Shown piece by piece: positions 10,201 to 64,000 of a stretch of 64,000 bases of DNA (positions are counted from its first letter, which is position 1; every line of letters begins with the position of its first letter). Under the pieces are notes generated by a model that made no database searches, had not been told where the DNA came from, and saw only the letters and a program-made list of their open reading frames with translations. The stretch comes from Macrostomum lignano (lineage: Eukaryota): the NCBI GenBank assembly GCA_002269645.1, contig NIVC01000822.1, forward strand, positions 310,001-374,000. The letters run 5' to 3'. Position numbers and translations under genes: made by a program.

Positions 10201-10226
10201 CTGACTGTTAAAATAAACAAAAACTT

Positions 10227-10239: not shown

Positions 10240-10526
10240 GCACGCGAAGGTGTATTCAGCACGCCAGTGAAGTATGAGACAGACCAGGCCTATGGGCTAC
10301 GGTCTGCGATGCTTCACGCCTGCCCCTATCTTCAGCAGGTCAAGGCTGGTGGGAGGTCTGCACCCGCTATTTGCCGCTGGCAGCCGCAGACTCCCCCACG
10401 CTGTCTCGCAAGTCGACCCAGGGGTACCCGTCCCCGCGTGTGTTCAAGGCAGACCCTAGGGGGCTGCTGGACAGACTGGGCTCCGGCGCTGGCGACCCTA
10501 TCCAGTGGCTTCGGCCGAATTTGGGT
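10240..10526 (+). ncRNA. Predicted HDV-like (CPEB3-type) self-cleaving ribozyme at the LINE 5' end
   Basis: Manual fold: P1 GCACGCG(10240-46)/CGCGTGT(10435-41) with first-pair G-U wobble; P2 ACCCAG(10416-21)/TTGGGT(10521-26); P3 GGG/CCC around L3 TACCCGT; P1.1 AC(10426-27)/GT(10442-43); P4 base TCAAGGC/GCTTCGG; J4/2 CCGAA. Confidence 0.75.
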
Positions 10527-10731
10527 ATGCGGGTCTGGCCCGCCAGCCTGCAGGCCATGGTGCTGCTTAACGTACCCTCTAATGCCTAAGGTGTTTGACG
10601 GTGCCGATGGGCTGGAAGGCCGGGGAGTAGTCCGGTCGCTAGCGGTCCTTTTTTCAAACCGGCTGGCTTGAGGTGTCGGCCAGTCGGGTACTCAACTCGC
10701 ATAACGAGTAGCCCTCCCCCGCTTTTCAGCT

Positions 10732-12262: not shown

Positions 12263-12264
12263 AC

Positions 12265-15200: not shown

Positions 15201-15727
15201 ACTCCCTCGCTAAGGCGGGCTGTTCCAGCTCGCCCCTTGGCCCCGTGCGCCTGGCCCCCATCCCCGCCACAGTCATTAATCGTCAGATTAACGACTGGGC
15301 GGACATCCTGCACTTGCGCAGATGGGATGGTATCTCCAACTGCCGCCAATCTCGTGCGGCAGTGCCCAATTCGTCCCTCAAGCTGCGGAGAATCCTTTTG
15401 AACCAAAATCGAAAAGATATCCGCGCTCTCACTATGACCTTCACAGGTCACGGTTGCTTTGCCAGGCACTGTTTCCTCCGAAGTTCCCGCCGGAGCGAAC
15501 TCTGCCCTTTCTGCAACCTCGAGAACGAAGACGCCAAGCACTTCGTCTGCTACTGCCCGGCCTTCAACCGAGACCGGCTCAACCACCTCGGGCCCAACCC
15601 GTCCCTGGTCGACGTTTGCCGGCCCGAGAACATCCCACGGCTCATCCGGTTCCTCCGGGCCACCAAGCGAGCCTCCGTCTTCCCTACCGAAGACAACGCT
15701 GCAGACAGGACCGGCAGACCTCCCTGA
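12265..15727 (+). pseudogene. LINE ORF2 (APE endonuclease, RT, RNase H, zinc knuckle), disrupted by a deletion, frameshifts and stops
   Basis: ATG at 12265; domains spread over ORFs 12362-13417, 13507-13752, 13864-14664 and 14912-15727. The catalytic motif reads YTDD rather than YADD. Confidence 0.85.
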
Positions 15728-15838
15728 CCGGCCCCGCGCCCTAGCCTATGCGGGTTTTTCAGGGATTAGCGAAATGGGCGACGCTCGCCTCCCCGCTGCG
15801 TCTTCGGACCGCCCTGCAGCTAAGTCAAGTAAGTCAAG

Positions 15839-17064
15839 CGGCTAAGACTGCCCGCCGTCTAGCTGACGCTGGCATTCGAATCCAGCCCCATAGGGCCATG
15901 GCTAAGCGCAAGCTTCTGCCCCACGCCGACCTCTGCCTCAAGGACTTGAGAGACAGCGGCGGGCTCCACGTCCTATCTGACGGCGAACCCCGCACTCTCA
16001 ACCTCTTTCAGCGCTACAAGATCACCATGCCCTCTAGGGATGCTGCCAATGACCACTGGAATTTCCAGGAGGTCCATTGCTACACGGACGGATCCATCAA
16101 AGACGGTCGCGCCGGCTTTGGGGTCTGCTTCATCATCAACGGCCGCGTAATTGCCACGCATGCCCAGCACACTGGTAGACTCTCCACAGTCTTCGAGAAC
16201 GAAGTCCTTGCCATCAGCTCTTGCGCTGCAGAGCTGAACGCCAAGGGTACGAGAGGAAAGACTATTGTCATCTACTCCGATGGCCAAGCGGCCTTACAGG
16301 CCCTTTGCCACACCAAAACGAACTCCCGGACAGTCGCCGACTGCGCTCGGCAGCTCAACCTCCTGGCCAGTAGCAATACTGTCAGGCTGAAGTGGATCCC
16401 AGGGCACGCAGGGTTTCCGGGGAACGAGCTGGCAGACACCCTCGCCAAGAGGGGCGGCTTTGGCTCTTTCTTCGGCCCTGCCCCCCCCCCGGTCCCTATG
16501 CCCTTGACAGTCATCAATCGTCAGATCGACGACTGGGCTGACTCCCTCCACAGGGACAGATGGGCGGGCACCCAAAACTGCCCCGGTAATCTCGTGCCGC
16601 GGTTCCTTGCCCGTCTCGCAGGCTCAGAAACATCCTTCTGAACCAGAATCGGAAGGATATTCGAGCCCTTGTCATGACCCTCACGGGCCATGGCTACCTC
16701 GCCAGGCAATGCTTCCTCCGAGGTGACCTCGAGAGCGAATTTTTCCCCTTTTGCGAGTGCGACAATGAAGATGCTCAGCACTTTGTTCGTCACTGCCCTT
16801 TCTTTACCAGAGACCGGCTACGCTACCCGTCTTGACGAGGTTTGCCAACCCGACAGCATCTCACGGCTCATCCAGTTCCTTCGGGTGACTAGACGAGCCA
16901 ATTTCTTCCCAACGGAAGATCACGCTGCAGGACGGACCGGCGGACCACCCTGACCGGCCCCACGCCTCTGCCTGTCTGCGGGCCTTCAGGGGCTAGCGGA
17001 ATGGGCGACCCTCGCCTCCCCGCTGTGTCTACGGACCACCCTGCAGCTAAGTCAAGTAAGTCAA
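15839..17064 (+). mobile_element. 5'-truncated second LINE of a diverged subfamily (RNase H, zinc knuckle, 3'UTR, (TAAGTCAAG)2 tail)
   Basis: Colinear with 14605-15838 but with many substitutions; 'CYTDGS', 'WIPGHAGFPGNELADTLAK'; identical tail. Confidence 0.9.
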
Positions 17065-18411: not shown

Positions 18412-21400
18412 TTAAGAGAACAGCCATTTGGCTAGCCTCTCGATACCTCCTCGGATGTACGCAGTGATGCCATAGACGCTCGTCGGCTTCGGAAAAAACT
18501 CTTCGTACCTGCGGTAAACTCGGGTCTCGGTCTGCAGGAGTACGTTCAGCAGCTCGTCCTTGCCTAGGTTCTCAGCTCGGACAGCGAGCTCTCGAATATC
18601 CAGCAGTTGTTGGATTCGGTCGCGATACCCATCATCCTTGCTCATCTGCTCGGCGTCAATCAGCTTGTCAATGTAGTCAACCTCGTTCAGAGGGTCAGGC
18701 TTCAGAGCGATCTGCTGCAGGCGCCCGATGCACTTTTTGCTCTCCTTGACCAGCTGCATCACGTTGGCCTTCATCCCGAGGTACTCCTCATACACCCGCT
18801 GCGCCAGCTGCTTGGCCGACAGCAGTTTCCCCTCCGCATCGGTGTAGCGACCTTTCAGGTCATCCGACGTCTTTGTAACAGTTTGCTGAGTAATAACAAA
18901 TTTGTATGTCATGTTCTTGTGGACTGACCATACACAACCACTTTCGCACACGTGGCAATGGCCATCTTTCATCGCCACGCAGTGAATTTTGTCTGCATCG
19001 TCGGATAACGCACATGGATAGTGGCACGTCCTGTTGCACGTTAGACAGTTCGTGATGTAAGTTCCGGAAGGAATCGGCTGGCAGACTGCTGTGTCTTCCA
19101 CCACTGTGTATGTGAAGTTGCGGTTACGGTCCAAATCTGACTGGTGAGCCTTGATAACGGATATTTCGCGCTCCAGCTGATTCAACTTGTTCAGACCTTG
19201 ATCGATCTCCGCCTTGATGGCAATTAAGTGAGTCTGCAGTCTCTGTCGCTCACTCAGAACATCTTTGGTCAGGGTCAGGCTCTTTGCCGTAATCTTCATC
19301 AAGTGGGAGAAAAATCCTTGAAAGCTGTTTATTCCCATATCCCAGAACATTCTGTTGAACATTTGGCTCGTCTGGTCCATTTCCTGACACTTGGCAAATA
19401 CAGCAGAGTTGTTGAATTTGATGTGTAAATTGTAGCAGATCCTCGCTTCCTTAAGGGACTCGAGTACAGGAGGTATATTTGCATCAGCAAATGTGATTAG
19501 CATGTAGATGTTTTCGCCAATATCCTTACCGAACAGAGAGAGGATCGAGTCGAAAACGTATCGCTGCGTTGGCGTCAGTCTGGCGACACTCGAAGGCACC
19601 ACAAAGCCCACAGCATCCAAGTGATCAATGCCACTTGGACAAGAGAAGAACTCTCTGATTCGGTCGACAATCTTCTTGTCGTTCATGATGCCGCCAGTGT
19701 CACCAAATCCTGGCGTGTCCACCAGAGTCAACGAGCAAGGTTGCTGACAGCCATCGCGATGGTGAAATGTGTAGGATGTGACCCATTGAGTTTGACTCAT
19801 TGACTGAAATGTCTTAAGTTTCTTTTCCTTTGGATCTGTAACGACTCTGAAGCGAAACGGGTCTTCGTACTTCACACCGAAGATGTAGTTGACCATCGAG
19901 TTGATCAGAGTAGTTTTTCCAGAGCCAGTTTCACCAACGATCATAATCACTTTCTCATCAAATCCGGAGAAACTATCGCGTCCGAACTCCATTTTCCGAA
20001 CTTGGTGCACTGGATCACAGAACGTCTGGTCCATTTGCAACTCGTACTCAAGAGGCGGCGTAGCCTCAGAATCTAGTTTTAGAGAAGAGTTGAGCAAATT
20101 ATACTTCATTCTGTCCGCTAATGTCGATTTTACTTCATGGGTGACATTCCTTCTCTGCTCTCCAACAGAGTTATCTGAGAGCACTGCTGAAGCAGAAAAT
20201 GCACAGCAGCCATCTCCATTGACTTCGATGGGAACAGTCTTTTGCGAAGGATCAGCCTTAACATAAGTCTCATGGCCTGAGCTGTGTCCCTGCTCGAGCA
20301 CAGTGATTCGATAACCAACCAGACGGGCTTTTTGCTGCTGCAACACAGGCGGAGTCAGCTCTAGTTCCACACGAAATGGGGACACCTGCGTAACTGAAGC
20401 AATGTCCGGAGCGGCGCATGCCAATGTTGTCACCATCGGCAGATATTTCACTTCGCAGCGACCGAACATCCGAATGGTCTGATAGGACACCTGATAGGCG
20501 GTACCCATTTTCAACTGCTCAAGTCGAGCAATTCCACCGTTTGAGCCAAAGTTTTTGATGAGCTCCATCCACTCATTGCTGTGTTCTTCCTTGTAGCGAA
20601 TCGACACACCTTGAACTTCGTTTTCTTTAAAATCAGCAGCTCTCAGAGGTGAAAATAGCAGCTCAATTGCATTTGACACAGAACGCACGGAGCCAACAGA
20701 AAGGGATGCGGAAAAACTCTCAATAGAGAATAATATTGAGTCCAGGCGTTCAAGTACAATATGAGCACGAATTATTTTTTCGGCTTGCTGTTGCAACTTT
20801 ATGCAAAGATGCCAATCGTCTTGTTGATCATTAGCCTCAATTACTTTTAGCATAGCTTGCAAACTTTGGGTACAATCTTTGAGAGCAGTCGCAAGATCGA
20901 AATCCTCCCATTGCAGCAACTTTGGTGCGTTGGTTGGAAATACCAACGACACGGTGCAGCAGGTCTTGCCACCAGCTGGTTCAAAAGCTTTCGATTTTGA
21001 CAGCTGCGTTATAGCCGTTAAGACATCGAGAAACTCACCCAGCATTGGCAACCAGCTAAAGCTGGGAACGAAAGGAATGCAGTCCTTCAGAGATGCGGGT
21101 GTCTGGGTGCTGTTTCTAACTCGAACTTTGTTCACTGTAACATTATTCTGCACAAACTGCAAAGCTGTAGTCAGTGTTTTGCGTAGATACGGAACATCAT
21201 GTAGCACTTTGTAGCCCAGAAGCTCCTCAATACTTCGAGCCACCTTCTGACCTTCGTATAGCCGCTGCAGCACATCTGCACTGGTATTACACCCTTGAAC
21301 GGAACTCTGCTGCTTGCTGGCATCAAAAACTTTAAACAGATTGGCAGCATGAAGTGGTCCTTCGGGAGCAGCATCCATTTTTTCAAGAGAGTCTTTAAAC

Positions 21401-22021
21401 TCAGACAGACCCATTAGTATTACGGTGCCATTTAAAAATGTTTTAATCTTGGCCGTTTCAATGTCGCCATCGCCTGAAAATGAAAACATGGAACAACTAG
21501 TGAAAATTTAAAACAAAACATATTCTATGCTTTAATATCTTAGCGCGACATCAAAGGGTCGTACCTTTCACGATTCCACACAGCAGCCACCCTTGCGACA
21601 CGCAGGATACTTCACCGGGCTTTACACCTCCCTGATCAACTGCACTGGCAGAGACGCATTTTTCTTGGAGAACGCCTATCACTAGCTGCTTGGAGAAGTC
21701 GCAGTTGTCCCACAGGTAATGCAGCAGGTCTTGAAGCGAGCAGTTGACATTACTCGTACTTGGCGATGCGTGGCAAATAAGCTTCAGAGCCTGCAGAGAA
21801 GTCAGGCCGAGAGCAGCGACATCGCTTAGAAATGTGTCCGAGCTGTCAAAGAATATTTCTATTTTTTTGTTGCTGACCGCATCCTTGAGTCTGAACTCTG
21901 CTCCAGGGGAGGAATCGCCATGCGAACTCTCAATAAAGCTGTCCGACTCTACTGAGTATTGCTGACCCAGGTTAACTTGTCTGTCAAATGAATGCAGCCA
22001 AGCAGATTGACGGAATGACAT
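18412..22021 (-). CDS. Two-exon gene join(21565-22021,18412-21473), about 1172 aa: stonustoxin-like N-terminal domain + 2 FN3 + septin/AIG1-like GTPase + Cys-rich insert + coiled coil
   Basis: GT-AG intron 21474-21564 (91 nt, phase 1) joins ORFs 21551-22021 and 18412-21489 in frame. N-terminal 'SFDRQVNLGQQYSVESDSFI' resembles the SNTX ALGRPFxLGMLYDxRxD start (lower confidence). FN3-like 'YKEEHSNEW...LEQLKMGTAYQV'; G1/G3 motifs. Confidence 0.8.
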
Positions 22022-40327: not shown

Positions 40328-40443
40328 TGTCTGTCTGTCTGTCTGTATGCCTGTCTGTCTATTTGTCTGTCTGTCTGTCTGTCTGTATGCCTGTCTGTCT
40401 ATTTGTCTGTCTGTCTGTCTGTATGCCTGTCTGTCTATATGCC

Positions 40444-40474
<31 letters not shown>

Positions 40475-40586
40475 ATGCCTGTCTGTCTATTTGTCTGTCT
40501 GTCTGTCTCTGTCTGTCTGTCTGTATGCCTGTCTGTCTATTTGTCTGTCTGTCTGTCTGTATGCCTGTCTGTCTGTCTGTCTGTCC
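40328..40586. repeat. (TCTG)n compound microsatellite
   Basis: TCTG/TATG/CCTG units. Confidence 0.9.
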
Positions 40587-40786
40587 ACAGCCCAAAATCA
40601 TTTGCAGCACTCTTTTTTGTCATATATTCTACTCACAGTAACACTTGGAAAATTATAATTAAATCCTGCAAGGTCTGAATTCAGCCTAGAGATCCTAACT
40701 GAAGTGGCAGCAATGTGAAACAGAACAAAAATTATTTATTGTCAAGTCTACAGAACAAAAATCCCCAATTCCCAGCCCGCCAGTCC

Positions 40787-41149
40787 ATGGCTCCCCGACG
40801 TGAGAAGAAAAAGAGCGCCCTAAAAGACGTGGTGACCCGGGAGTACACCATCAACCTGCACAAGCGCATTCACGGCGTCGGTTTCAAGCGCCGGGCGCCG
40901 CGTGCAATGACGGAGATTCGCAAATTCGCGGAGAGAATGATGGGCACCCCGGACGTGCGGCTGGACACCCGGCTGAACAAGTTCGTGTGGAGCCAAGGCG
41001 TCCGCAATGTGCCGTTCCGCGTCCGCGTCCGCCTGGCCAGGAAGCGCAACGAGGACGAGGACAGCGCGCACAAGCTGTACACCCTGGTCTCCTACGTGCC
41101 CTGCGCCGAGTTCAAGGGCAAGCAGACCATCAATGTTGAGGCCGAGTAG
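40787..41149 (+). CDS. RPL31: 60S ribosomal protein L31 (intronless CDS, 120 aa)
   Basis: '[26 protein letters not shown]...[38 protein letters not shown]'; ATG 40787 preceded by acceptor-like CCCAG at 40771-40775. Confidence 0.97.
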
Positions 41150-41364
41150 TGCGAGGTTAAACTTGACTAGATGGGACTGACTTGCTGATAGATTGCGAGG
41201 GCAGGTTCTTGATTGAGCATGAAATACAGGGGCTGACGCTGTTGAGCGTGTTTTTAGCTGGATTGCACTGTCTCTGCGCTTGTTCTTTACTTTCATATTA
41301 TTTAGAGAGCATCTCTACCTGTGCTTGTGGCTTGTGATTAGTTCTAGAAAGGTAGTTGCTGTGC

Positions 41365-41852
41365 CAGCCTCCCAGATCCTCAGTTGCTGGGCCACCAGCC
41401 TCCCAAATCCTCAGTTGCTGGGCTATCGCCCTCCCAGACCGTCAGTTGCTGGGCCAGCCTTCCAGATCCCCAGTTGCTGGGCCAGCCTTCCAGATCCCCA
41501 GTTGCTGGGCCAGCCTTCCAGATCCCCAGTTGCTGGGCCAGCCTTCCAGATCCCCAGTTGCTGGGCCAGCCTTCCAGATCCCCAGTTGCTGGGCCAGCCT
41601 TCCAGATCCCCAGTTGCTGGGCCAGCCTTCCAGATCCCCAGTTGCTGGCTGGGCCAGCCTTCCAGATCCCCAGTTGCTGGGCCAGCCTTCCAGATCCCCA
41701 GTTGCTGGGCCAGCCTTCCAGATCCCCAGTTGCTGGGCCAGCCTTCCAGATCCCCAGTTGCTGGGCCAGCCTTCCAGATCCCCAGTTGCTGGGCCAGTCT
41801 CCCAGATCCCCAGTTGCTAGGCCAGCCTTCCAGATCCCCAGTTGCTGGGCCA
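41365..41852. repeat. 28-bp minisatellite (GGGCCAGCCTTCCAGATCCCCAGTTGCT), about 17 copies, between RPL31 and MRM1
   Basis: Directly visible tandem units. Confidence 0.95.
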
Positions 41853-41923
41853 CCGTCACATTCCAACTTTCGAATCTCCAACATTTCACCGACCGGCTTC
41901 TTTAGACAGCCCTTTTTCTCCAG

Positions 41924-44900
41924 CTCCTACTGCGACCGTCAGCTGCCCGACTGTCGCTGCTGCTGTGCCGCAGGTTGTTCAGCAACAGCGGCGGCGGCGG
42001 CTCCGAGCTGGTGTACGGCATTCACCCGGTCTGGCAGGCGCTGTTGTCTCGCCGTCGTCGAATTGACGAAATCTACGTTGACATTCGACACCAAGGGCAA
42101 AGCGACGTCATAGAAGACTTCGGCTGCGACAGCTCCAGCTCGGCCGAGCTGCGCCAGCTCATCGCTGCCAGCTATGCTCACCTGGTCAGGTACGCTGACA
42201 GGCGCGAACTGGCCGCTCTGTGCCGGGGTCGGGCGCATCAAGGATTCGCGCTGCGGTGCGGACACTTCCCTGTGCCTGTGCTGCCCGGCTGTGCCTCCGA
42301 CTGCCGCTCTGAGCTGGCGGCGAGTCGGCTGTGTGTGCTGCTGGACCAGGTGGGGAAGAGATGCAGGGGAGAATGGGGAAGAGATGCAGGGTGAATGGGG
42401 AAGAGATGCAGGGTATAATGGGGAAGAGATGCAGGGGAGAATGGGCAAGAGATGCAGGGTATAATGGGGGAGAGATGCAGGGTATAATGGGGAAGAGATG
42501 CAGGGTAGAATGGGGAAGAGATGCAGGGTAGAATGGGGAAGAGATGCAGGGTATAATGGGGAAGAGATGCAGGGTAGAATGGGCAAGAGATGCAGGGTAT
42601 AATGGGGGAGAGATGCAGGGTATAATGGGGAAGAGATGCAGGGTATAATGGGGAAGAGATGCAGGGTAGAATGGGCAAGAGATGCAGGGTATAATGGGGG
42701 AGAGATGCAGGGTATAATGGGTGAGAGATGCAGGGGAGAATGGGCAAGAGATGCATTGGAGAGAATCGGCAAGAGATGCATTGGGGAGAATCGGCAAGAG
42801 ATGCATTGGGGAGAATCGGCAAGAGATGCATTGAAGAATGGGCAAGAGACGCATTGGAGAGAATCGGCAAGAGATGCATTGGAGAGAATCGGCAAGAGAT
42901 GCATTGGAGAGAATCGGCAAGAGATGCATTGGGGAGAATCGGCAAGAGATGCATTGGAGAGAATCGGCAAGAGATGCATTGGAGAGAATCGGCAAGAGAT
43001 GCATTGGAGAGAATCGGCAAGAGATGCATTGGAGAGAATCGGCAAGAGATGCATTGGAGAGAATCGGCAAGAGATGCATTGGAGAGAATGGGCAAGAGAT
43101 GCATTGGAGAGAATCGGCAAGAGATGCATTGGAGAGAATCGGCAAGAGATGCATTGGAGAGAATCGGCAAGAGATGCATTGGAGAGAATCGGCAAGAGAT
43201 GCATTGGAGAGAATCGGCAAGAGATGCATTGGAGAGAATGGGCAAGAGATGCATTGGAGAGAATGGGCAAGAGATGCATTGGAGAGAATCGGCAAGAGAT
43301 GCATTGGAGAGAATCGGCAAGAGATGCATTGGAGAGAATCGGCAAGAGATGCATTGGAGAGAATCGGCAAGAGATGCATTGGAGAGAATCGGCAAGAGAT
43401 GCATTGGAGAGAATCGGCAAGAGATGCATTGGAGAGAATCGGCAAGAGATGCATTGGAGAGAATCGGCAAGAGATGCATTGGAGAGAATCGGCAAGAGAT
43501 GCATTAGAGAGAATCGGCAAGAGATGCATTGGGGAGAATCGGCAAGAGATGCATTGAAGAATGGGCAAGAGATGCATTGGAGAGAATCGGCAAGAGATGC
43601 ATTGGAGAGAATCGGCAAGAGATGCATTGGAGAGAATCGGCAAGAGATGCATTGGAGAGAATCGGCAAGAGATGCATTGGAGAGAATCGGCAAGAGATGC
43701 ATTAGAGAGAATCGGCAAGAGATGCATTGGAGAGAATCGGCAAGAGATGCATTAGAGAGAATCGGCAAGAGATGCATTGGAGAGAATCGGCAAGAGATGC
43801 ATTGGGGAGAATCGGCAAGAGATGCATTGAAGAATGGGCAAGAGATGCATTGGAGAGAATCGGCAAGAGATGCATTGGAGAGAATCGGCAAGAGATGCAT
43901 TGGGGAGAATCGGCAAGAGATGCATTGAAGAATGGGCAAGAGATGCATTGGAGAGAATCGGCAAGAGATGCATTGGAGAGAATCGGCAAGAGATGCATTG
44001 GAGAGAATCGGCAAGAGATGCATTGGAGAGAATCGGCAAGAGATGCATTGGAGAGAATCGGCAAGAGATGCATTGAAGAATGGGCAAGAGATGCATTGGA
44101 GAGAATGGGCAAGAGATGCATTGGAGAGAATCGGCAAGAGATGCATTGGAGAGAATCGGCAAGAGATGCATTGGAGAGAATCGGCAAGAGATGCATTGGA
44201 GAGAATCGGCAAGAGATGCATTGGAGAGAATCGGCAAGAGATGCATTGGAGAGAATCGGCAAGAGATGCATTGGAGAGAATCGGCAAGAGATGCATTGGA
44301 GAGAATCGGCAAGAGATGCATTGGAGAGAATCGGCAAGAGATGCATTGGAGAGAATCGGCAAGAGATGCATTGGAGAGAATCGGCAAGAGATGCATTGGA
44401 GAGAATCGGCAAGAGATGCATTGGAGAGAATCGGCAAGAGATGCATTGGAGAGAATCGGCAAGAGATGCATTGGAGAGAATCGGCAAGAGATGCATTGGA
44501 GAGAATCGGCAAGAGATGCATTGGAGAGAATCGGCAAGAGATGCATTGGAGAGAATCGGCAAGAGATGCATTGGAGAGAATCGGCAAGAGATGCATTGGA
44601 GAGAATCGGCAAGAGATGCATTGGAGAGAATGGGCAAGAGATGCATTGAAGAATGGGCAAGAGATGCATTGGAGAGAATCGGCAAGAGATGCATTGGAGA
44701 GAATCGGCAAGAGATGCATTGGAGAGAATGGGCAAGAGATGCATTGGAGAGAATGGGCAAGAGATGCATTAGAGAGTATCGGCAAGAGATGCATTGGAGA
44801 GTATCGGCAAGAGATGCATTGAAGAATGGGCAAGATCACATGAATCAGCACGCACCCGCAGGTGGTGGACATCCTTAACTTCGGCAGTCTGCTCCGCACC

Positions 44901-45350
44901 TGTCTGTTCTACGGTGTCAGCCCGGTGCTCATACCGGGCACCCACAGCTGCCCCCCTCTGCCAGTGGTCTCCAAGGTGAGCTGCGGCGCTCTGGAGGCCA
45001 CGGACTTGCGCGCCCTGCCCGCCAGCAGCGCTGAGTTTGTGCGCCAATGGCGCCAGGCTGGCTGGCTGGCGCTAGGCAGCTCGGGAGGCGATGACGGCGC
45101 CCCTGGAGTGCCTTGCGCCGGCGTCGATCGGCTGACGGAGCTGCTGCCGCATCCGCCCAGCGGTCCGGTGCTTCTGCTGCTTGGCAGCGAGGGCTCCGGC
45201 CTGTCAGCTGAGCTTCTGAGCCTCTGCAACCTGGTGCTGCGGATTCCACAAGCTGGCGCCGCCTGCGCCATGCCGCATCTGAATGTGGGAGTGGCGGCCG
45301 GCATCCTGCTGCACTGCGTCTCGGGCTGGCTGCGGTCTGCTGCTGCCTGA
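41924..45350 (+). CDS. MRM1: Mitochondrial rRNA methyltransferase 1 (SpoU/TrmH family), join(41924-42349,44862-45350); no genomic ATG in the first exon
   Basis: 'LVYGIHPVWQAL', 'HQGFAL', spliced 'LLDQ|VVDILNFGSLLR', 'LLLGSEGSGL', 'HLNVGVAAGILLH'; GT-AG intron 42350-44861; N-terminal Arg/Leu/Ser-rich presequence-like segment after acceptor TTTTTCTCCAG (41923). Confidence 0.85.
42350..44835. repeat. Intronic minisatellite: 23-bp units grading into 25-bp units (CATTGGAGAGAATCGGCAAGAGATG), about 100 copies
   Basis: Fills almost the whole MRM1 intron. Confidence 0.95.
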
Positions 45351-45377
45351 GGCCTCCGGACTGCGGAGTTTTGCGCT

Positions 45378-45462
45378 TTGCCTGTCTGTCTGCCTGTCTG
45401 CCTGCCTGTCTGCCTGCCTGCCTGCCTGTCTGTATGTCTGTCTGTCTGCCTGCCTGCCTGCC

Positions 45463-45518
<56 letters not shown>

Positions 45519-45582
45519 CCTCTATTTGTGTCTGTCTGTCTGTCTGTCCCTCTATTTGTGTCTGTCTGTCTGTCTATCTATA

Positions 45583-45625
<43 letters not shown>

Positions 45626-45670
45626 GTCTGTCTGTCTGTCCATCTATCTGTGTCTGTCTTTGTCTGTCGT
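45378..45670. repeat. (TCTG/CCTG)n microsatellite downstream of MRM1
   Basis: Directly visible. Confidence 0.9.
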
Positions 45671-46032
45671 CTGACTGTGTCCTGTCTGAGGATTTGTGGT
45701 TTTTAACCTGTCTAAATTCTGACTGGGCTTTCTCACCTCTGCTCTATACTTCACTCCCTGCCCTCTCTTCTATTGAAGCCTCCCCTCTCACTTCTACGGT
45801 ATCTTCCTGGTTTTATACTAGATCTATAATGATGCATTTTTCCAATCCAAGCGTTTTTAAATGTAATTAATAACGAAGGAATAATCATATGAAAGTCGAT
45901 TTTTGCGCCAGGATAGTTTTCATTGTTATACTCTTTTTTTTACATTTTTTCATTTGTACCGATTTTTTTCGTTTTAAGAATTAATAGATGAAATATTGAA
46001 CTCGCTTTCAGAGAGACCAGAGCATCCCCACA

Positions 46033-48610
46033 ATGGCCGCTTTCTTAGACAGACAGCGAACTAACCAAAATAATAATAATTACTACTATTGCGATCCCGA
46101 GTCTCAGTCCGCACTGCAGTTGCCCATGGCAACCAGCTTTGCCACCACCGATGTTGCCTCCTCGCTGGATGACAGCCTCCTGCTGCCTCCGGATGCCTTC
46201 CTGCCGTCGGCTGCCGCTGCGGCGCCGCACTCGGTTCGGTTTGTCCCTGCCGACGCCCCTCCTGCGGCGGCTCCGTGCCGCTCCTGCCGGCAGCTGGAGC
46301 GCGACCTCGCCCGGCAGCGTCGAGAGTTGGAGCGGCTGCGGCGGCAGCAGCTGGAGACGCAGAGCCTGCTGGATCAGGAGAGGCAGCAGCGGATGGAGCT
46401 GGCTGAGCCAACGCCGCGGGTGAGCCGAGCGCCTGTTGATGTACAGACAAATCTTTTGAGTATTAGTGTCTGTAGATATTGAGCAGACATCTGTAGGCAC
46501 ATGTTTTGAGCGGTAGAAAATCAGGAATCTATAGGCGCCTGTAGATCTGCAGCGGGTTTTTCTATAGACATGTGTAAACAGAAGCTTAAATCTATAGGGC
46601 ATCGTGGTTACACAGGTCTCTATAGACTCGTGGATCTCCAGATATCTCTAGGTATCTATAGACACGTGTAGATCTACAGCAGGCATCTATAGACACTTGT
46701 AGAGATCTATAACACTTTTCTATAGACGCTTGTAGATCAATGGCAAGCATTTATGAACACTTGTACGTCTATAGCCGACGTCTACAGAGATATTTAGATC
46801 TACAGTAGGAATTTATAGACACATGTTGATGTACAGCAGGCATCTATGGACACATGTAGATCTATACCACGTCTCTATTGACGCTTGTAGATCTATGACA
46901 GGCATCTATAGACACATGTATATCTACAGACACAGAGATGTAGATCTATGACAGGCATCTATAGACACATGTAGATCTACAGACACAGAGATGTAGATCA
47001 ATGACAGGCATCTACAGACACAGAGATGTAGATCAATGACAGGCATCTATAGACACATGTAGATCTATTCGATTGTCAAGTTGTTTCTCACAACCTAGAC
47101 TGCTTTACAATGCAGGACTGGGACGACAGTCGCGACGCCCTGGCCACCAGAGCCGCCCAGCTTGAGGCTGAAAACGAACGCCTTCGAGCCGACGCTGAGC
47201 TTCGGGAACGCCGGCTGGCCCTGCAGTCCGAGCTGCTTGCCGAGCCCAGCGCTGGCGGCGAGGCTGCGGCCTGGAGGCCCCGGCTGTACAAGGCGCTGGT
47301 GCAGGCCGAGGCTGAGCGCTGGGCGCACGACAGACAGCTGAGACAGACGGTAGGTGGGGCAGACAGACAGGCAGACAGACAGACACTAGGACAGACAGGC
47401 AGGCAGACATGGACACTAGGACAGACAGGCAGGCAGACATGGACACTAGGACAGACAGGCAGGCAGACATGGACACTGAGGCACACTCAAAGGTCACTGA
47501 GAGTCCCAATCCCCACCCCTGTAGGAGGCCGAAGCCGAGGCCGCAGTTTCCGACCTTCGCCGCCGCCTAGACGAGGCGGAGGCGCGCGCTGCGGCCGCCG
47601 AGCGCAAGCTGGCCGCTGCGGACCGGCTGGCGGAGCGGCTTCAGTCGGACGCCCGGCGTCTGGCAGAGCGTCGGGCGCGAGAGGCGAGCGAAGCGGCCGA
47701 GGCTGTTAAATCGGCCAGGGCAGCCTTCGAATCTGCGGCCGGGCTGTGGATGGAGCGCCTGGCCGACATGGAGGGGCGCCTCGGCCGCCTGGCCGACACC
47801 ACCGACCAGCTGGCCGCGTCCGAGAAGGTGCGGAGGCGGCATGTTTTACTGTCTGATTTAATAGTCTCAATCTTACCCACTTGGTTAATCTCACTCCTAA
47901 ATTGTCAATCTCACCCCACTCCATCAATCTCATCCCACTCCATCAATCTCATCCCACTCCATCAATCTCATCCCACTCCATCAATCTCATCCCACTTCAT
48001 CAATTTCTCCCACTCCATCAATCTCACCCCAGTCCATCAATCTCATCCCACTCCATCAATCTCATCCCAGTCCATCAATCTCACCCCAGATCGTCAATTT
48101 CACCCCAGTCCACCAATCTCACCCCAGTCCATCAATCTCACCCGCTCGCAGCTGTCCGAACTCTCCTCGGTGTCCGAGCTTCGCGCCGCCCTGTCCGAAA
48201 CTCGATCAGCGCTGGACTCGGAGCGCCAGGCGCGCCGCCTCGAAGCTGGGCGCCACGCGGACGCGCTGGACGCGTCGGCGCGCGAGCAGGCGAAGCTGGC
48301 GGCCGCGCTGGCCCAGTCGGAGCGCCGGCTGCAGCGGGAACGCGAGGCCGCCGAGGCTCAAGGCCGTCAGGCTGTTGAAGACTTTCAGCTGGCCACGGAG
48401 CGACTGCGGGATCGGCTGCGCCTGGTGGAGGGCGAGCGGAACCTCCTGCAGGCCGCGGCGGCGGCGGCCGCCTCAGAGAAGCAGCAGCAGCGAGCAGCGC
48501 GCCCGCACTCGGCGATGCCTGTCGCCGGGTCCGCCATCGAGGAGTCCGAGGACCCGCGACTGCATGCCGCTGTTCGCGACTTGAGACAGATGCTGGCCAA
48601 CTCCGGCTGA
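46033..48610 (+). CDS. Coiled-coil protein, CCHCR1-like; join(46033-46419,47116-47349,47525-47827,48152-48610), about 460 aa
   Basis: Four exons joined in phase 0 by GT-AG introns; 'RRLALQSELL...WRPRLYKALVQAEAERWAH' resembles the CCHCR1 WREKVFALMVQ motif (family call about 0.5); acceptor TTTCAG at 46011. Confidence 0.75.
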
Positions 48611-49085: not shown

Positions 49086-50029
49086 TTGGACAAGAGTCCA
49101 GTTTCTCCGTAGGACAGTTTAATCCGGACAGATTCTGTATTTTCAATGTCGACTATTGACTTCTTTTTCAGCCAAAAGCTCCTCTCGAAATTGTTTGTTT
49201 GTCTTACTGTAATTTAGATGCTATTTTGATTTTTTATATGCTCTTAGTTATCTAATTGTGCTCGACTTTGAAAGTTGCGCAGGTCTTTGTTCAATCTCTG
49301 TCCTTTTGCACTTAGAATTTGCTTATGCTGTGCTGTAAGCTTGCGTTAAAAATGCTGCTTATAATGTTACCTAATAGTTTTATTCAATTTCTATACATTA
49401 AATTGCGCTTTGCTGTTGAATAACTTTAATAAATTTCAATTTGTTTCGACAGATCCACAGTATATCGACCAGTGTTTTTCGTTAATATTCGTTTGTAAAA
49501 ACGTAGAATTAAAATTTCTTTGCTGAGCTTTAGAAATCTCCTTATTTTATTCTGTTGCTACTTTAAGTAGTTGGGCAGTGCGGCGAAAATTCTACTGTTC
49601 GCCAGTGAAGTGGGGCAGGTAAGTCAGTGCCTCTTCGCCGGGGTAATGCAAGCCACCTGGGCGAACTCTCTCTTGTAATTAAACGCAGAAGCTGCCGTTT
49701 GGTCTTTTCTGCTTTTAGAAGAGCGCACTTGAAGTCTTGATCGATCCGCCCGCTCCCCTTGGCAACTGAAACCTGAAGGTGGGGATGCGGATTCGTCAGG
49801 ATCCTGCGCTGCGTGTGGCCTCGGGGAGTTTCTGCTTTTTTGTGCACAGCAGACAATCTCCATTATCCTTGATGGAGTTTCAATCCGCTGATAGAGGTGT
49901 ATCATAAACTGCATTGCCAGTGCAGGCCAGCTTCTTAAGTAGCTTTAGCAGGTGGGAATAGACATTTGATAGATAGTTTATGCTCTGTAGGTTATAAGTA
50001 GATAGGCAGGCAAATAGGGGAGAGTCGTA

Positions 50030-50389
50030 GGCCGTAGTCTAGCGGTCTAGCGCGGCGCTCTGATATGCCAGCGGTCCCAGGCTCGATTCCGAGTGCAGTC
50101 ACATTAATCTGAGGCTAAATTGGAATCTCGGCTTGGCTCTGCTCGTGCAATTAGCGCCCTTGAAGGCCCACCCCCATGGCGCAGTGAAGTGTACATGCCT
50201 AGCGATAAATAAAGTTAGGGCCGCTGTACACTCCTGTGTGAGTGTGCGTATGACTGCGTACGTATCCGCGCGCTTGTGTGCCTGCTCAGGGGAGTCGGCG
50301 GAATGGGCAGTAATGCCTCTCTCCGGTTGTGCGACAATGTCGCTTGAAGTGCGCCAGGGTGCACAGAGCATCCCTGTCTCTAATAAAAA
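50030..50389 (+). mobile_element. tRNA-derived SINE (copy 2)
   Basis: A-box TAGTCTAGCGG, B-box-like GGCTCGATTCC, body homologous to 2230-2595, ends TAATAAAAA. Confidence 0.8.
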
Positions 50390-51060
50390 CTAGGTAGACA
50401 GGTAGATAGATAAGCAGATAGGTAGGAAGGTAGATAAATAGGCAGGTAGATAAATAGGCAGGTAGATAAATAGGCAGGTAGATAAATAGGCAGGTAGATA
50501 AATAGGCAGGTAGATAAATAGGCAGGTAGATAAATAGGCAGGTAGATAGATAGGCAGGTAAGATAGGTAGGCGGATAGACAGGTAGATAAATAGGCAGAT
50601 AGGTAGGAAGGCAGACAGGTAGATAGGCAGATGGGTAGGAATTGGTAGATAGGTAGGAAGGTAGATAGGCAGATAGGTAGGAAGGTAGATAGGCAGATAG
50701 GTAGGAATTGGTAGATAGGCAGATAGGTAGGAATTGGTAGATAGGCAGATAGGTAGGAATTGGTAGATAGGTAGATAGGTAGGAATTGGTAGATAGGCAG
50801 ATAGGTAGGAATTGGTAGATAGGCAGATAGGTAGGAATTGGTAGATAGGCAGATAGGTAGAAATTGGTAGATAGGCAGATAGGTAGGAATTGGTAGATAG
50901 GCAGATAGGTAGGAATTGGTAGATAGGCAGATAGGTAGGAATTGGTAGATAGGCAGATATGTACAAGGTACGCAGGTAGATAGGTAGGCAGGTAAGATAG
51001 GTGTATAGAAATGCAGATGGGTAGGAAGATAGGCAGGTAATGTAGATAGACAGACATAGA
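50390..51060. repeat. Compound (GATA/GGTA/GGCA) micro/minisatellite
   Basis: Directly visible; starts at the SINE tail. Confidence 0.9.
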
Positions 51061-61290: not shown

Positions 61291-61780
61291 TCACACGTAG
61301 TTCTCAATGGCCTCCATGTTGGACTCGAGGTGCGGCGTCAGCGGCGACGCCACGAAGGTCGGCTGCTGCTGCAGGCTGTGCAGAGCGGCGCCGATGTCCG
61401 ACAGGCCGCCGTTGCCGGCAACGATGCGAAATCGCCGCCGCCGCCACCTCCGCCGCCGCTGGGGAACGCGAAGGCCGTCTCAGCGGTGGCGCTAGTGACC
61501 GGCGGCGCCGAAGAAGCGCCAGTTGCTGCTGGCGTTGACGTCGCAGCCGCACTGGAGGTCGCCGGGATGACGCTGAAGCCGCTGCGGCTGCTCGCCAAGG
61601 AGATGCGGCTGCTGTACCTGATCAGCTCCGTTGCGCCCGCCGGAGTCTCCGACTGGACCAGGTCGGGCGTCAGCATCCTGCCGTGCTGCTGCTGCGGCTG
61701 CTGGCTGTTCAGGAGCCGTTGCTAGTGCCGTTAGTCGCTGGCGGGAGGCGGCGGCGGCAGCTGCCATCATCAACATGTGG

Positions 61781-61829
<49 letters not shown>

Positions 61830-64000
61830 CGGCCAGGTGATATGAGTAGTACGACGGGTGCAGCGGCGCCTCCTGAGCCGACATCCGGGAGCCCGGCGAG
61901 AAGCCTCCGCCGCCGCCGCCGCCACCATAGCCGTAGCCGCCGCAGACGCCGCCGTTGCCGCAGCCGCAGTCGGAGCCCAGGGCCGGGGGCGGCGGGCAGT
62001 AGTAGCCGTCCTGCGGTGCCATCCCGCTGGACAGGCTGGCGCGGTAGCCCAGCTGCACCGCCTGGCCGCACACCGGGTGGCCCGCAGCGATGGCCGCCGG
62101 CGAACCGCCCGACCCGTTGGTGACGTCGCTGGAGTTGGTCGACCGCATCGACTTGCCGACGCCCGGGCCGCCGCCTCCGTCGCCGCCGCCGCGACGGCAC
62201 TGCAGGATGGCGGTGACGATGACCGCGGCCAGCAGGATGGCCACCACCACGGCGCTGCCGATGGAGATGCCAGCACGATCTCGAAGGACAGGCCGGCGCT
62301 GGCGGTGCTCGCCTGAGTGGTCGACGCGGCGGCATTCAGCGGGCGTCGAAGCTGCGGGTCTCGTAGACGGTGACCGGGCCGTCCAGCACCAGCAGGGAGA
62401 AGCTGTAGGCCGCCTGCGGGTCGGGCAGCAGGATGCTGGCGCGGCCTGAGCGGACCTCCGACTCCAGCAGCTGTCGCAGGACGCAGCCGGGCTGCACAGC
62501 TTCACGTACACCCCGGTGTAGTGCGGCGACATCGGCGCTGTGAACTGGATCTCCAGCTGCCCGGAGGTCACCTGGGCCGCCACCGATGCGTCCGGGATCA
62601 GCGGCAGCTTCCGGGTGGTCAGCGCCACCTCGTCGGTGAAGGGGCTGACGTTGATCGCGCCGCCGTAGAAGTTCTCTGCTCGGACTCGCGCATAGTAGGT
62701 GGCCTGCGACTCCAGCGCGGTGACGGTCTCGGTGACGGGCAGGCCGAAGCCGGGGTCCCGCAGGCCGGTCTTCTGGTTGGCGACGCTCCACACGGAGCTG
62801 CCGAGCGGCCGCCACTGCAGCGTGAAGGTCTGCTCGAAGCCGCCGTTGAATTCACTGCGCCAGCGCAGGTTGGCGGACACCGCCGTGGTGTTCAGCACCT
62901 GCAGGCCGCTGGGGGTGGCGGGCGGCCCCGGCCGGTTCAAGCTGAAGGTGAAGTCGCGAGTGCCGACTGAGTTGGCCACGGTGCACACATAGTTGCCGTA
63001 GTCAGCCGAGGTCACCTCCGGGATGACGAGGCGGTAGGTGAGGTTCACCGCGCTGCTGACGGTGGACAGGCGCGGGTTCAGCGCCTGCTTGGTGCCATCG
63101 GCTCCGAGGCGCTGCCAGACGGCCCCGCTGGGCGGCGGGTTGGCCGTCACCCGCAGGAGCAGCTCGGCCGGCTGTCCGAGTGGGGAAGACACGGCCAACT
63201 GGGTGCCCGGCCAGGCGGCCGGGGCGAAGGTCAGGTTAAGGGCGGCCGAGGCTGTGGCGGAGCCACCGCGGGACCCCACCGAGCACTGGTAGACGCCGTT
63301 GTCTCCTGAGCTGGCCGACGCGATGCTCAAAGTGGACGTTGCGCTGGCGAGCGTCGCCCAGACGCCGCTGGCATTCCGATGTCGCCATACGAAGGTGAAG
63401 CCGCCGCCTGCCGTCGGGACTCCCGCCGGTTGTCAGGCAGCTCAGCGTCACCGGGTCGCCTTCGCGAGGCGAGCTGGGCGACACTGTGACGTTGACGGAT
63501 GGCGGGTACAGCACCAGCACGGAGGTCGACTTGGACAGGGCGCCGATTGCGGCGCTGTCGTAGACGATGGTGCAGGTGTACACCGTGCCGTTGTCTGCCC
63601 GCCTGGTCTGCGTGACGAGCAGGCGGCTGCTGACTGCAGTGCCGAGGTTCTCCGCCGGCTCCGTCGTTGCCACCGCCTGCACGGTGACATTCTCGGCCGA
63701 GCTGGCGCCGCCGCGGACTGCCGGAACCAGTGCACCCGGGCTGGCGGGTTCGCGGAGCCGGCGCGGCACAGCAGGGTCAGCGCCGTGTTCTCCAGCACCC
63801 CGTCGGCCGGGCTAGCCGTCAGCGCGGAGCTGCTCGGCAAAAATTTCACCTCCAGGGCGACGTCTTTGCGGCCGATCTCGCGCGAGTTGTACAGCAGGAC
63901 GCAGCGGAATTTGAAGCCGTTGAGGTCGCGGCTGGCGGCGATGTCCAGCCGGCTCTGCAGCTGCTTGGCCGAGTTCGGCCCGTCTGTCTGGCTGACGGAC
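61291..64000 (-). CDS. Ig-superfamily adhesion receptor (nephrin/sidestep-like: several Ig domains, FN3, TM, polyQ tail); 5'-truncated by the window and broken by several single-base frameshifts
   Basis: 'TLLCRAGSANPPARVHW', 'DNGTVYTC', 'DNGVYQC', 'DYGNYVCTVANSVG', FN3 'LRWRSEFNGGFEQTF', TM 'IGSAVVVAILLAAVIVTAIL'; manual translation of the last frame ends 'MEAIENYV*' (TGA at 61291-61293). Confidence 0.85.

What the first reader, a model, noticed from the sequence alone, without database searches (positions are those of the whole stretch)
40770..48610. Candidate trans-spliced operon RPL31 - MRM1 - CCHCR1-like
Seen: three same-strand genes with gaps of only ~770 and ~680 bp, largely filled by repeats; each begins just after a pyrimidine-rich AG (40775, 41923, 46011); I saw no AATAAA in either gap but one at 49428 after the last gene. 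Established: flatworms resolve polycistronic RNAs by SL trans-splicing. Inference: an operon coupling a cytosolic ribosomal protein with a mitochondrial rRNA methyltransferase.
Basis: partly seen in the sequence, partly recalled or inferred. Interest (0 to 1): 0.7.

Follow-up and report, generated by a model that had tools for sequence, protein, structure and literature searches.

The report
Ordinary Macrostomum trans-spliced gene cluster
Three tightly packed same-strand genes of the flatworm Macrostomum lignano (ribosomal protein L31, a mitochondrial-type rRNA methyltransferase, and a species-specific coiled-coil protein) look like one of the thousands of spliced-leader operons already described in this animal, and the middle gene can only be translated if the spliced leader supplies its start codon.

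Summary
The window is Macrostomum lignano Mlig_3_7 (NIVC01000822.1). It carries RPL31 (40787-41149), an RlmB/MRM1-type methyltransferase (41924-42349 and 44862-45350) and a 460-aa coiled-coil gene (46033-48610). All are on the + strand, with gaps of 774 and 661 nt that are 64% and 45% tandem repeat.

That annotation cut 5' ends at mapped SL-read peaks. MRM1 has no genomic start codon in this copy, and its acceptor is in frame with the AUG that ends the M. lignano spliced leader. A sister copy carries the SL's last 7 nt in place of the RPL31 acceptor, probably because the assembly was polished with RNA-seq.

The cluster meets the published M. lignano operon criterion of less than 1 kb repeat-adjusted distance. 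Co-transcription itself could not be tested.

"CCHCR1-like" is not supported, because gene 3 has no homologue outside M. lignano. The AATAAA argument carries no statistical weight. An older RPL31 paralogue is followed by RPS21 and NAC instead, so the RPL31-MRM1 pairing is not ancient.

Verdict: a likely operon (about 0.65), and an ordinary new member of a known kind.

The parts
40761..40775 (+). RPL31 trans-splice acceptor (…CCCCAATTCCCAG|), AG at 40774-75. An alternative AG lies at 40782-83.
   Evidence: The GenBank product RQSMAPRRE… begins at 40778, which puts the exon start at 40776. In sister copy L005 the CCCAG is replaced by GCATG, so the sequence reads TTGCATG, the SL's 3' end, directly abutting CCCGCC.
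40776..41149 (+). RPL31 (eL31) single exon. CDS is 40787-41149, 120 aa.
   Evidence: Pfam PF01198, E=4e-45. It is 97% identical to M. lignano BOX15_Mlig004813g1.
41150..41923 (+). Gap 1: RPL31 3'UTR plus a 28-bp tandem repeat (41354-41852), then the acceptor.
   Evidence: TRF. The same gap is only 351 nt in copy L001, with 2 repeat units against 17. It contains only two ATGs, each opening a 5-codon ORF with no in-phase GT donor.
41924..42349 (+). MRM1-like exon 1. There is no ATG. An in-frame TAG lies at 41903-05. The acceptor is CCCTTTTTCTCCAG| at 41922-23, with an alternative in-frame AG at 41904-05.
   Evidence: With the SL's AUG the product starts MLLLRPSAARLSLLLCRRLFSNS…
42350..44861 (+). 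MRM1 intron, GT…AG, almost entirely a 25-bp tandem repeat of about 101 copies.
   Evidence: TRF. The intron is 339 nt in L001 and 887 nt in L005.
44862..45350 (+). MRM1-like exon 2 (SpoU methylase domain). Stop TGA at 45348-50.
   Evidence: Pfam PF00588, E=3e-20. NCBIfam RlmB TIGR00186, E=5.5e-26. E. coli RlmB 1gz0, E=4e-12, with the SpoU motifs aligned.
45351..46011 (+). Gap 2: MRM1 3'UTR with (CTGT)n at 45382-45678, AT-rich unique sequence, then the acceptor CGCTTTCAG| (AG at 46010-11, followed by two further AGs).
46012..48610 (+). Gene 3, an orphan coiled-coil protein. Exons are 46012-46419 (ATG at 46033), 47116-47349, 47525-47827 and 48152-48610.
   Evidence: Splice model. The GenBank model spans 46012-48610 and gives 467 aa. 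The only hit is M. lignano BOX15_Mlig018771g4.
49428..49433 (+). The only canonical AATAAA downstream of gene 3. It may be the gene 3 poly(A) signal.
   Evidence: The position is confirmed. The function is inferred.

Best explanation
The region is a three-gene, SL-resolved transcription unit (operon) of Macrostomum lignano.

**Proposed mechanism (inferred).** A promoter upstream of RPL31 drives a precursor RNA that runs through RPL31, the RlmB/MRM1-type mitochondrial rRNA 2'-O-methyltransferase and an orphan coiled-coil gene. Each cistron is released by 3'-end cleavage of the upstream mRNA and by trans-splicing of the 35-nt spliced leader onto the AG acceptor of the next gene, at 40775, 41923 (or 41905) and 46011.

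**Role of the SL's AUG.** The leader ends in AUG.
- For MRM1 that AUG is the only available initiator. It is in frame and creates an arginine- and leucine-rich N-terminus with no acidic residues, which looks like a mitochondrial presequence.
- For gene 3 it is in frame with the genomic ATG 7 codons downstream.
- For RPL31 it opens a 16-codon overlapping uORF, unless the AG 8 nt downstream is used.

**Repeats.** Tandem repeats have inflated the gaps and the MRM1 intron without disrupting the unit.

**Shown here:** gene content, order, strand, gaps, acceptors, the frame relationships, and the fact that the annotated 5' ends fall on the acceptors.

**Inferred:** SL addition to MRM1, mitochondrial targeting, and above all co-transcription from one promoter.
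For: 1. **Organism.** The locus is M. lignano Mlig_3_7, NIVC01000822.1.
2. **Annotated 5' ends fall on acceptors.** The GenBank models start at 40778 (exon start 40776) for RPL31 and at 46012 for gene 3, each immediately after the predicted AG and with no ATG. That annotation cut 5' ends at peaks of mapped SL-containing reads (TBONE; PMC5730564). The same AG-then-CDS pattern appears at RPS21 and NAC in a paralogous locus and in the two sister copies of gene 3.
3. **SL footprint.** In sister copy L005 the RPL31 acceptor TTCCCAG reads TTGCATG, the last 7 nt of the SL, abutting the same exon base. The assembly was Pilon-polished with RNA-seq. This is most simply an imprint of SL-RPL31 reads.
4. 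**MRM1 needs an AUG from elsewhere.**
   - An in-frame TAG lies 18 nt upstream of the acceptor.
   - There is no Met codon before residue ~281.
   - Gap 1 has only two ATGs, both dead ends.
   - The acceptor at 41923 is in phase 0, and the SL ends in ATG (PMC8629364).
   - SL-AUG initiation is documented in flatworms (Cheng et al. 2006, cited in PMC9851317).
5. **MRM1 is a real gene.**
   - The ORF is intact in all three copies.
   - There are 9 synonymous against 8 nonsynonymous changes, where 27% synonymous is expected under neutrality (P=0.02).
   - The SpoU motifs are conserved against RlmB.
   - Its absence from GenBank is explained by the submitters' removal of transcripts that overlap repeats.
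6. **Operon criterion.** The published rule is a repeat-adjusted distance under 1 kb, with a mode near 100 bp and repeats known to inflate operon gaps. Here stop-to-acceptor distance minus TRF repeats is at most 275 nt and at most 364 nt.
7. **Isolation.** The cluster is a GC-rich island. There are no GC-rich exons for about 10 kb upstream or about 12.8 kb downstream, and no called genes in the flanks that were fetched, 10 kb upstream and about 2.5 kb downstream.
Against: - No RNA data were available. No read spanning a gap, no SL read, no poly(A) site and no TSS was seen directly.
- About 60% of trans-spliced M. lignano genes are not in operons, so trans-splicing alone does not prove co-transcription.
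- Gap 2 holds about 330 nt of unique AT-rich sequence that could house a promoter.
- RPL31 is presumably expressed far more strongly than MRM1.
- The [T/C]TNCAG motif is common, including in every 28-bp repeat unit.
- Copies L001 and L005 each have a chance in-frame ATG inside the repeat upstream of MRM1. The 'no genomic start' argument is therefore strict only for the window copy.
- All three copies are recent duplicates, 1-6% diverged. Their shared order says nothing about selection for linkage.
Confidence: 0.65

Rival explanations
1. Three independently transcribed genes. Each has its own promoter in the short upstream gap and each is trans-spliced as a monocistronic transcript. The tight spacing is incidental.
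For: About 60% of trans-spliced M. lignano genes are not in operons. Gap 2 contains about 330 nt of unique AT-rich sequence. Expression levels of a ribosomal protein gene and MRM1 are expected to differ greatly. No polycistronic RNA was observed here.
Against: Gap 1 is only 351 nt from stop codon to acceptor in copy L001, and that includes the RPL31 3'UTR, which leaves little room for a promoter. The distances fall in the short mode that defines operons in this species. The cluster is isolated, with no GC-rich exons for at least 10 kb on either side.
Confidence: 0.25
2. The MRM1-like sequence is an unexpressed or decaying relic with no start codon. The real picture would then be two separate genes, RPL31 and gene 3, about 4.9 kb apart.
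For: There is no ATG in the window copy. There is no MRM1 model in GenBank at any of the three copies. No M. lignano MRM1 protein exists in the 5.8-billion-protein set. The intron is 2.5 kb of tandem repeat.
Against: The 304-codon ORF and GT/AG intron are intact in all three copies, despite large repeat-number changes around them. Synonymous changes are in excess (P=0.02). The SpoU catalytic motifs are kept. The acceptor is in frame with the SL's AUG. GenBank submission deliberately dropped transcripts overlapping repeats.
Confidence: 0.07
3. The acceptors are used in cis. Read-through transcripts would splice from a donor in the upstream gene or its UTR, giving chimeric RPL31-MRM1 or MRM1-gene 3 mRNAs rather than SL-capped monocistrons.
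For: Flatworm acceptors are often shared between cis- and trans-splicing (PMC12582326). GT[GA]AG-like sites exist at 40800 and 44976.
Against: Both donor-like sites lie inside conserved coding sequence that aligns to homologues. Neither gap contains a GT[GA]AG. A chimeric mRNA would leave MRM1 without an initiator. The annotated 5' ends sit at the acceptors.
Confidence: 0.03

Closest known systems
Macrostomum lignano SL trans-spliced operons (Wudarski et al. 2017, PMC5730564; Ustyantsev & Berezikov 2021, PMC8629364)
   Same: It is the same species and assembly. The genes are same-strand neighbours. Repeat-adjusted gaps are well under 1 kb. The gaps are inflated by tandem repeats, as those authors describe. 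Downstream genes begin at [T/C]TNCAG acceptors. A size of three genes is typical: 18% of operons have three genes.
   Different: Nothing structural differs. This particular cluster is not described individually in the papers read. Its middle gene is missing from the GenBank 'coregenes' annotation.
Flatworm SL-AUG-initiated ORFs ('slORFs'; Cheng et al. 2006 J Biol Chem 281:733, as cited in PMC9851317)
   Same: The SL ends in AUG. The MRM1 acceptor is in phase with the ORF. There is no usable genomic AUG in the window copy, so the SL must supply the initiator Met.
   Different: The phenomenon was shown experimentally in Schistosoma. Here it is inferred from sequence only. Two sister copies have fortuitous in-frame ATGs in the upstream repeat.
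RlmB / MRM1 (Pet56) 23S/16S rRNA G 2'-O-methyltransferases, SpoU (SPOUT class IV) family
   Same: Both domains are present (SpoU_sub_bind plus SpoU_methylase). The match to RlmB is full length (TIGR00186, E=5.5e-26; 1gz0, E=4e-12). The motifs N-x-G-x-L-x-R, G-S-E-G-x-G-L and I-P-x-x-G…L-N-V are conserved.
   Different: The protein is very divergent, at most 31% identical to anything in the databases, and it scores below the NCBIfam cut-off. Orthology to MRM1 rather than to another RlmB-like enzyme is inferred. Mitochondrial import was not tested.
C. elegans operons (SL2-type)
   Same: Polycistronic units are resolved by SL trans-splicing. Intercistronic regions are about 100 nt. Membership is enriched for translation and mitochondrial housekeeping genes (author's own knowledge of Blumenthal & Gleason 2003, which is cited in PMC8629364).
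   Different: M. lignano has a single SL and no specialised SL2. The gaps here are bloated by tandem repeats.
CCHCR1 / HCR coiled-coil protein
   Same: The only shared property is a long alpha-helical coiled-coil composition.
   Different: There is no Pfam match of any kind at E<=10, so no match to an HCR/CCHCR1 family either. No homologue outside M. lignano appears among 5.8 billion proteins or 1.84 billion representatives.

Membership tests
M. lignano SL-resolved operon (criteria of PMC8629364) | Immediately adjacent genes on the same strand, not interrupted by an opposite-strand gene | tested here: met
   All three genes are on the + strand. Minus-strand ORFs in the region are repeat artefacts. 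GenBank calls no other genes from 10 kb upstream to about 2.5 kb downstream, the flanks that were fetched.
M. lignano SL-resolved operon (criteria of PMC8629364) | Repeat-adjusted intergenic distance below 1 kb | tested here: met
   Stop codon to acceptor is 774 nt and 661 nt. After subtracting TRF repeats this is at most 275 nt and at most 364 nt. True poly(A)-to-acceptor distances would be shorter.
M. lignano SL-resolved operon (criteria of PMC8629364) | The downstream gene or genes carry the SL, shown by SL reads at the acceptor | tested here: inconclusive
   Gene 3: the annotated 5' end lies exactly after the AG in three copies, in an annotation whose ends were set by SL-read peaks. MRM1: only the frame and missing-start-codon argument is available. 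No reads were seen directly.
M. lignano SL-resolved operon (criteria of PMC8629364) | A single promoter and a polycistronic precursor RNA | not testable with these tools
   No RNA-seq, RAMPAGE or long-read data could be reached. No M. lignano transcriptome-assembly product turned up in the protein searches.
SL-AUG-initiated ORF (flatworm slORF) | The SL ends in AUG and the acceptor is in phase with the ORF | tested here: met
   The SL is CGGTCTCTTACTGCGAAGACTCAATTTATTGCATG. Exon starts at 41924 and at the alternative 41906 are both in frame 0.
SL-AUG-initiated ORF (flatworm slORF) | No usable genomic AUG between the upstream stop and the conserved domain | tested here: met
   In the window copy there is a TAG at 41903-05 and no Met until about residue 281. 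L001 and L005 have copy-specific in-frame ATGs within repeats that are not homologous to each other.
RlmB/MRM1 SpoU methyltransferase | SpoU_sub_bind plus SpoU_methylase architecture with conserved SpoU motifs | tested here: met
   PF08032 (E=2.7e-7) and PF00588 (E=3e-20). RlmB TIGR00186, E=5.5e-26, over positions 3-234 of 240. Motifs are aligned to 1gz0.
RlmB/MRM1 SpoU methyltransferase | Orthology to mitochondrial MRM1 specifically, and mitochondrial import | tested here: inconclusive
   RlmB is the best match. No PDB chain labelled MRM3 matched, even at E<=10. The first 23 residues of the N-terminus contain 4 Arg and no Asp or Glu. No orthology tree and no targeting predictor were run.
Ribosomal protein eL31 | Full-length Ribosomal_L31e domain and high identity to metazoan RPL31 | tested here: met
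   PF01198, E=4e-45. Identity to other metazoan RPL31 proteins is 70-82%, and 97% to the M. lignano paralogue.
CCHCR1 / HCR | Detectable sequence homology to the HCR family | tested here: not met
   There are no Pfam hits at E<=10. Only M. lignano's own cluster is found.

The most novel reading that the evidence does not exclude
The linkage of RPL31 to the mitochondrial rRNA methyltransferase could be functional. One promoter would then co-regulate cytosolic and mitochondrial ribosome production, for example in proliferating neoblasts, with obligatory SL-AUG initiation acting as a second control point for MRM1. My evidence does not exclude this but argues against its being ancient: the older RPL31 paralogue pair sits next to RPS21 and NAC, with no MRM1 within 10 kb.
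Probability: 0.1. Interest if true: 0.4.

Novelty: new member of a known kind. Interest (0 to 1): 0.2.

Why it matters
It matters little beyond curation. Operons resolved by SL trans-splicing cover about 15% of M. lignano genes and have been catalogued genome-wide.

Useful by-products:
- An intact RlmB/MRM1-type gene is absent from GenBank and UniRef for this species. It appears to depend on the SL's AUG for translation, and it would be a clean test case for SL-supplied initiation and mitochondrial presequences in a transgenic flatworm model.
- RNA-seq polishing of Mlig_3_7 can overwrite trans-splice acceptors of highly expressed genes with SL bases. This is an assembly artefact worth knowing about, and it doubles as in-silico evidence for a trans-splice site.
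- Repeat expansion changes operon gap and intron sizes 2- to 7-fold between near-identical copies without breaking the genes.

Tried and rejected
- **Exact-product look-up of RPL31 (120 aa):** not on record, because the annotated product carries 3 extra N-terminal residues.
- **M. lignano SL in the window, up to 3 mismatches:** absent, so there is no SL RNA gene here. The 7-mer TTGCATG occurs at chance level in the window.
- **Rfam and ARAGORN:** Rfam found nothing on the whole window at gathering threshold, nor on 49400-50500 at E<=1. ARAGORN found no tRNA.
- **Initial doubt about the organism:** the best MRM1 hit was a Symbiodinium protein at 31% identity. The RPL31 search and the contig look-up settled it as M. 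lignano.
- **Supplements of PMC5816591** searched for MRM1, RPL31 and Mlig004813: nothing found.
- **Cis-spliced start exon for MRM1 in gap 1:** rejected. There are only two ATGs, each opening a 5-codon ORF with no in-phase donor.
- **RPL31 as an SL-bearing retrocopy** (to explain TTGCATG in L005): rejected as less parsimonious. The two other copies have an intact acceptor at the same base, there is no poly(A) remnant, and RNA-seq polishing is documented.
- **Paralogue divergence as a constraint test on gaps versus exons:** uninformative. Divergence is 0.4-6% and patchy.
- **AATAAA absence as operon evidence:** rejected on expectation (0.65 expected).
- **Bacterial promoter/terminator scan:** not used, because it does not apply to a metazoan.


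Full report
**Identity of the window**

The RPL31 ORF is 97% identical to M. lignano BOX15_Mlig004813g1. A 123-aa product identical to the window's own is recorded on two contigs of GCA_002269645.1, which is Mlig_3_7. The window equals NIVC01000822.1 with an offset of 310,000, and L002 is the same DNA. Other content of the window fits a metazoan: Ig/fn3 domains, AIG1-type GTPases and a LINE element.

**The observation**

All three genes lie on the + strand.
- RPL31 is a single-exon CDS at 40787-41149 (Pfam L31e, E=4e-45).
- The second gene has two exons, 41924-42349 and 44862-45350. They are separated by a GT…AG intron of 2,512 nt that is almost entirely a 25-bp tandem repeat of about 101 copies.
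- The third gene has four exons: 46012/46033-46419, 47116-47349, 47525-47827 and 48152-48610. This model reproduces the length of the GenBank product, 467 aa, which is 460 aa plus 7 codons upstream of the ATG.

The gaps from stop codon to acceptor are 774 and 661 nt. A 28-bp repeat with 17.5 copies fills 64% of the first gap, and (CTGT)n fills 45% of the second. AG acceptors lie at 40774-75, 41922-23 and 46010-11, preceded by 67-87% pyrimidine. There is no AATAAA in the gaps and one at 49428. Only 0.65 would be expected in 1.43 kb, so that contrast is not evidence.

**What the genes are**

Gene 2 has SpoU_sub_bind plus SpoU_methylase domains. Its best curated match is RlmB, the 23S rRNA Gm2251 methyltransferase (TIGR00186, E=5.5e-26, nearly full length). 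Its best solved relative is E. coli RlmB/YjfH (1gz0, E=4e-12), with the three SpoU motifs aligned. No chain labelled MRM3 appears in the PDB search, even at E<=10.

Gene 3 has no Pfam hit even at E<=10. Its only relative among 5.8 billion proteins, and among 1.84 billion representatives read exhaustively, is its own M. lignano cluster, BOX15_Mlig018771g4. 'CCHCR1-like' is therefore not supported. Gene 3 is an orphan coiled-coil protein.

**Evidence for trans-splicing at the three acceptors**

M. lignano has one 35-nt SL, CGGTCTCTTACTGCGAAGACTCAATTTATTGCATG. The Mlig_3_7 annotation cut transcript 5' ends at peaks of mapped, SL-trimmed reads and then ran TransDecoder (TBONE).

*1. Annotated 5' ends.* The GenBank CDSs of RPL31 (RQS-MAPRRE…, starting at 40778, so the exon starts at 40776) and of gene 3 (RDQSIPT-MAAF…, starting at 46012) begin without an ATG at the first base or bases after the predicted AG.
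- In the sister copies, the gene 3 models start after the second AG (L005) or third AG (L001) of the run TTTCAGAGAG.
- The L005 RPL31 model starts after the next AG, 8 nt downstream.
- RPS21 and NAC in a paralogous locus show the same pattern of an AG followed directly by the CDS.

*2. An SL footprint.* In L005 the RPL31 acceptor …CAATTCCCAG|CCCGCC reads …CAATTGCATG|CCCGCC. That is three substitutions within five bases, and they recreate the SL's last 7 nt at exactly the exon boundary. The assembly was polished with Pilon using RNA-seq as well as DNA reads. The simplest reading is that SL-RPL31 reads overwrote the acceptor, which indirectly records the junction.

*3. MRM1 has no genomic initiator in this copy.*
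- An in-frame TAG lies at 41903-05, and there is no Met codon until about residue 281.
- Gap 1 contains only two ATGs, each opening a 5-codon ORF with no in-phase donor.
- The best acceptor in the region is 41922-23, with 87% pyrimidine and a [T/C]TNCAG match. It is in phase 0, as is the alternative AG at 41904-05.
- Adding the SL's AUG gives MLLLRPSAARLSLLLCRRLFSNS…, with 4 Arg and no acidic residue in the first 23 residues.
- Use of the flatworm SL's terminal AUG as initiator is documented (Cheng et al. 2006, cited in PMC9851317).

For gene 3 the SL's AUG is also in frame. For RPL31 it opens a 16-codon overlapping uORF, unless the AG at 40782-83 is used.

**Is MRM1 a live gene?**

It is missing from GenBank at all three copies and from every protein set searched. 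The best hit anywhere is a Symbiodinium protein at 31% identity. However, the submitters removed transcripts that overlap repeat annotations, and this gene is embedded in repeats. The ORF, the intron boundaries and the acceptor are intact in all three copies. Among the copies there are 9 synonymous and 8 nonsynonymous changes, against a neutral expectation of 27% synonymous (P=0.02). L001 and L005 each carry a fortuitous in-frame ATG inside the upstream repeat, and the two are not homologous to each other. The strict 'no start codon' statement therefore applies to the window copy only.

**Operon or three neighbours?**

The published M. lignano analysis reports the following:
- 30% of genes are trans-spliced and 15% lie in operons.
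- 75% of operons have two genes and 18% have three.
- Repeats inflate the intergenic distances of operons.
- After subtracting repeats, distances between trans-spliced genes are bimodal, with a peak near 100 bp. The threshold for calling an operon is 1 kb.

Here the repeat-adjusted stop-to-acceptor distances are at most 275 and at most 364 nt. In copy L001 the first gap is only 351 nt in total, with 2 repeat units instead of 17. The cluster is a GC-rich island with no GC-rich exons for about 10 kb upstream or 12.8 kb downstream. GenBank calls no genes in the fetched flanks, 10 kb upstream and about 2.5 kb downstream. By the field's own criterion this is an operon.

Co-transcription itself remains unshown. 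I had no RNA reads, poly(A) sites or TSS data. Most trans-spliced genes in this species are monocistronic. Gap 2 retains about 330 nt of unique AT-rich sequence. I put co-transcription at about 0.65.

**Is the RPL31-MRM1 pairing meaningful?**

The three copies are recent duplicates, 0.4-6% diverged, so their shared order carries no weight. The older RPL31 paralogue pair (97% amino-acid identity; L003 and L004) is followed by RPS21 and then NAC. No MRM1 or gene 3 lies within 10 kb of it. The pairing is therefore not an ancient, conserved coupling.

**Comparison and verdict**

This is an ordinary member of the known class of M. lignano SL-resolved operons. The middle cistron is a probable instance of the known flatworm phenomenon of SL-supplied initiator codons. 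Interest is low.

Noticed in passing
L005:6365-6369 (homologous to window 40771-40775): The RPL31 acceptor CCCAG is replaced by GCATG, so the sequence reads TTGCATG, the 3' end of the M. lignano SL, directly abutting the exon. This is probably an imprint of SL-bearing RNA-seq reads from Pilon polishing. Such footprints could mark trans-splice sites of highly expressed genes across Mlig_3_7.
   Followed up: partly
L003:10001-11910; L004:10001-13917: The older RPL31 paralogues are followed on the same strand by RPS21 (gap of about 1.26 kb) and NAC (gap of about 0.77 kb). The GenBank CDSs of RPS21 and NAC start right after TTGCAG| and CTGCAG|. An AATAAA lies about 13 nt upstream of the NAC acceptor. 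This looks like a second putative operon of translation-related genes.
   Followed up: partly
window 41924-45350: The RlmB/MRM1-type gene has no counterpart in GenBank or UniRef for M. lignano. The nearest protein anywhere is 31% identical. It seems to have been lost from the submitted annotation because transcripts overlapping repeats were filtered out.
   Followed up: yes
window 41354-41852 and 42356-44835, compared with L001 and L005: Tandem-repeat copy number differs greatly between near-identical copies. The 28-bp unit has 17, 2 and 14 copies. The MRM1 intron is 2,512, 339 and 887 nt long. Exons stay 98-99% identical throughout.
   Followed up: yes
window 46005-46016: The gene 3 acceptor is a run TTTC-AG-AG-AG. 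The GenBank models of the three copies begin after the first, second and third AG respectively. Only the first puts the SL's AUG in frame.
   Followed up: partly
window 40328-40585 and 45382-45678: The same (TGTC/CTGT)n microsatellite lies both upstream of RPL31 and in the MRM1 3' region.
   Followed up: no
window 10200-16650 (+): A GC-rich non-LTR retrotransposon with broken ORFs carrying endonuclease (Exo_endo_phos_2), RVT_1 and RNase H domains.
   Followed up: no
window 3143-4846 (+) and 18412-21489 (-): Two long ORFs with an AIG1/septin-type P-loop GTPase domain. They are apparently paralogues in opposite orientation.
   Followed up: no
window 61492-63330 (-): A very GC-rich (70%) ORF with Ig I-set and fibronectin type III domains. 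It is probably an exon of a cell-adhesion-type gene that runs off the window.
   Followed up: no
window 50027-50102: A tRNA-like stretch (…GTAGTCTAGCGGTC…GGCTCGATTCCGAG…) downstream of gene 3. An identical copy lies in L005. Neither ARAGORN nor Rfam recognises it. It may be part of a SINE.
   Followed up: partly
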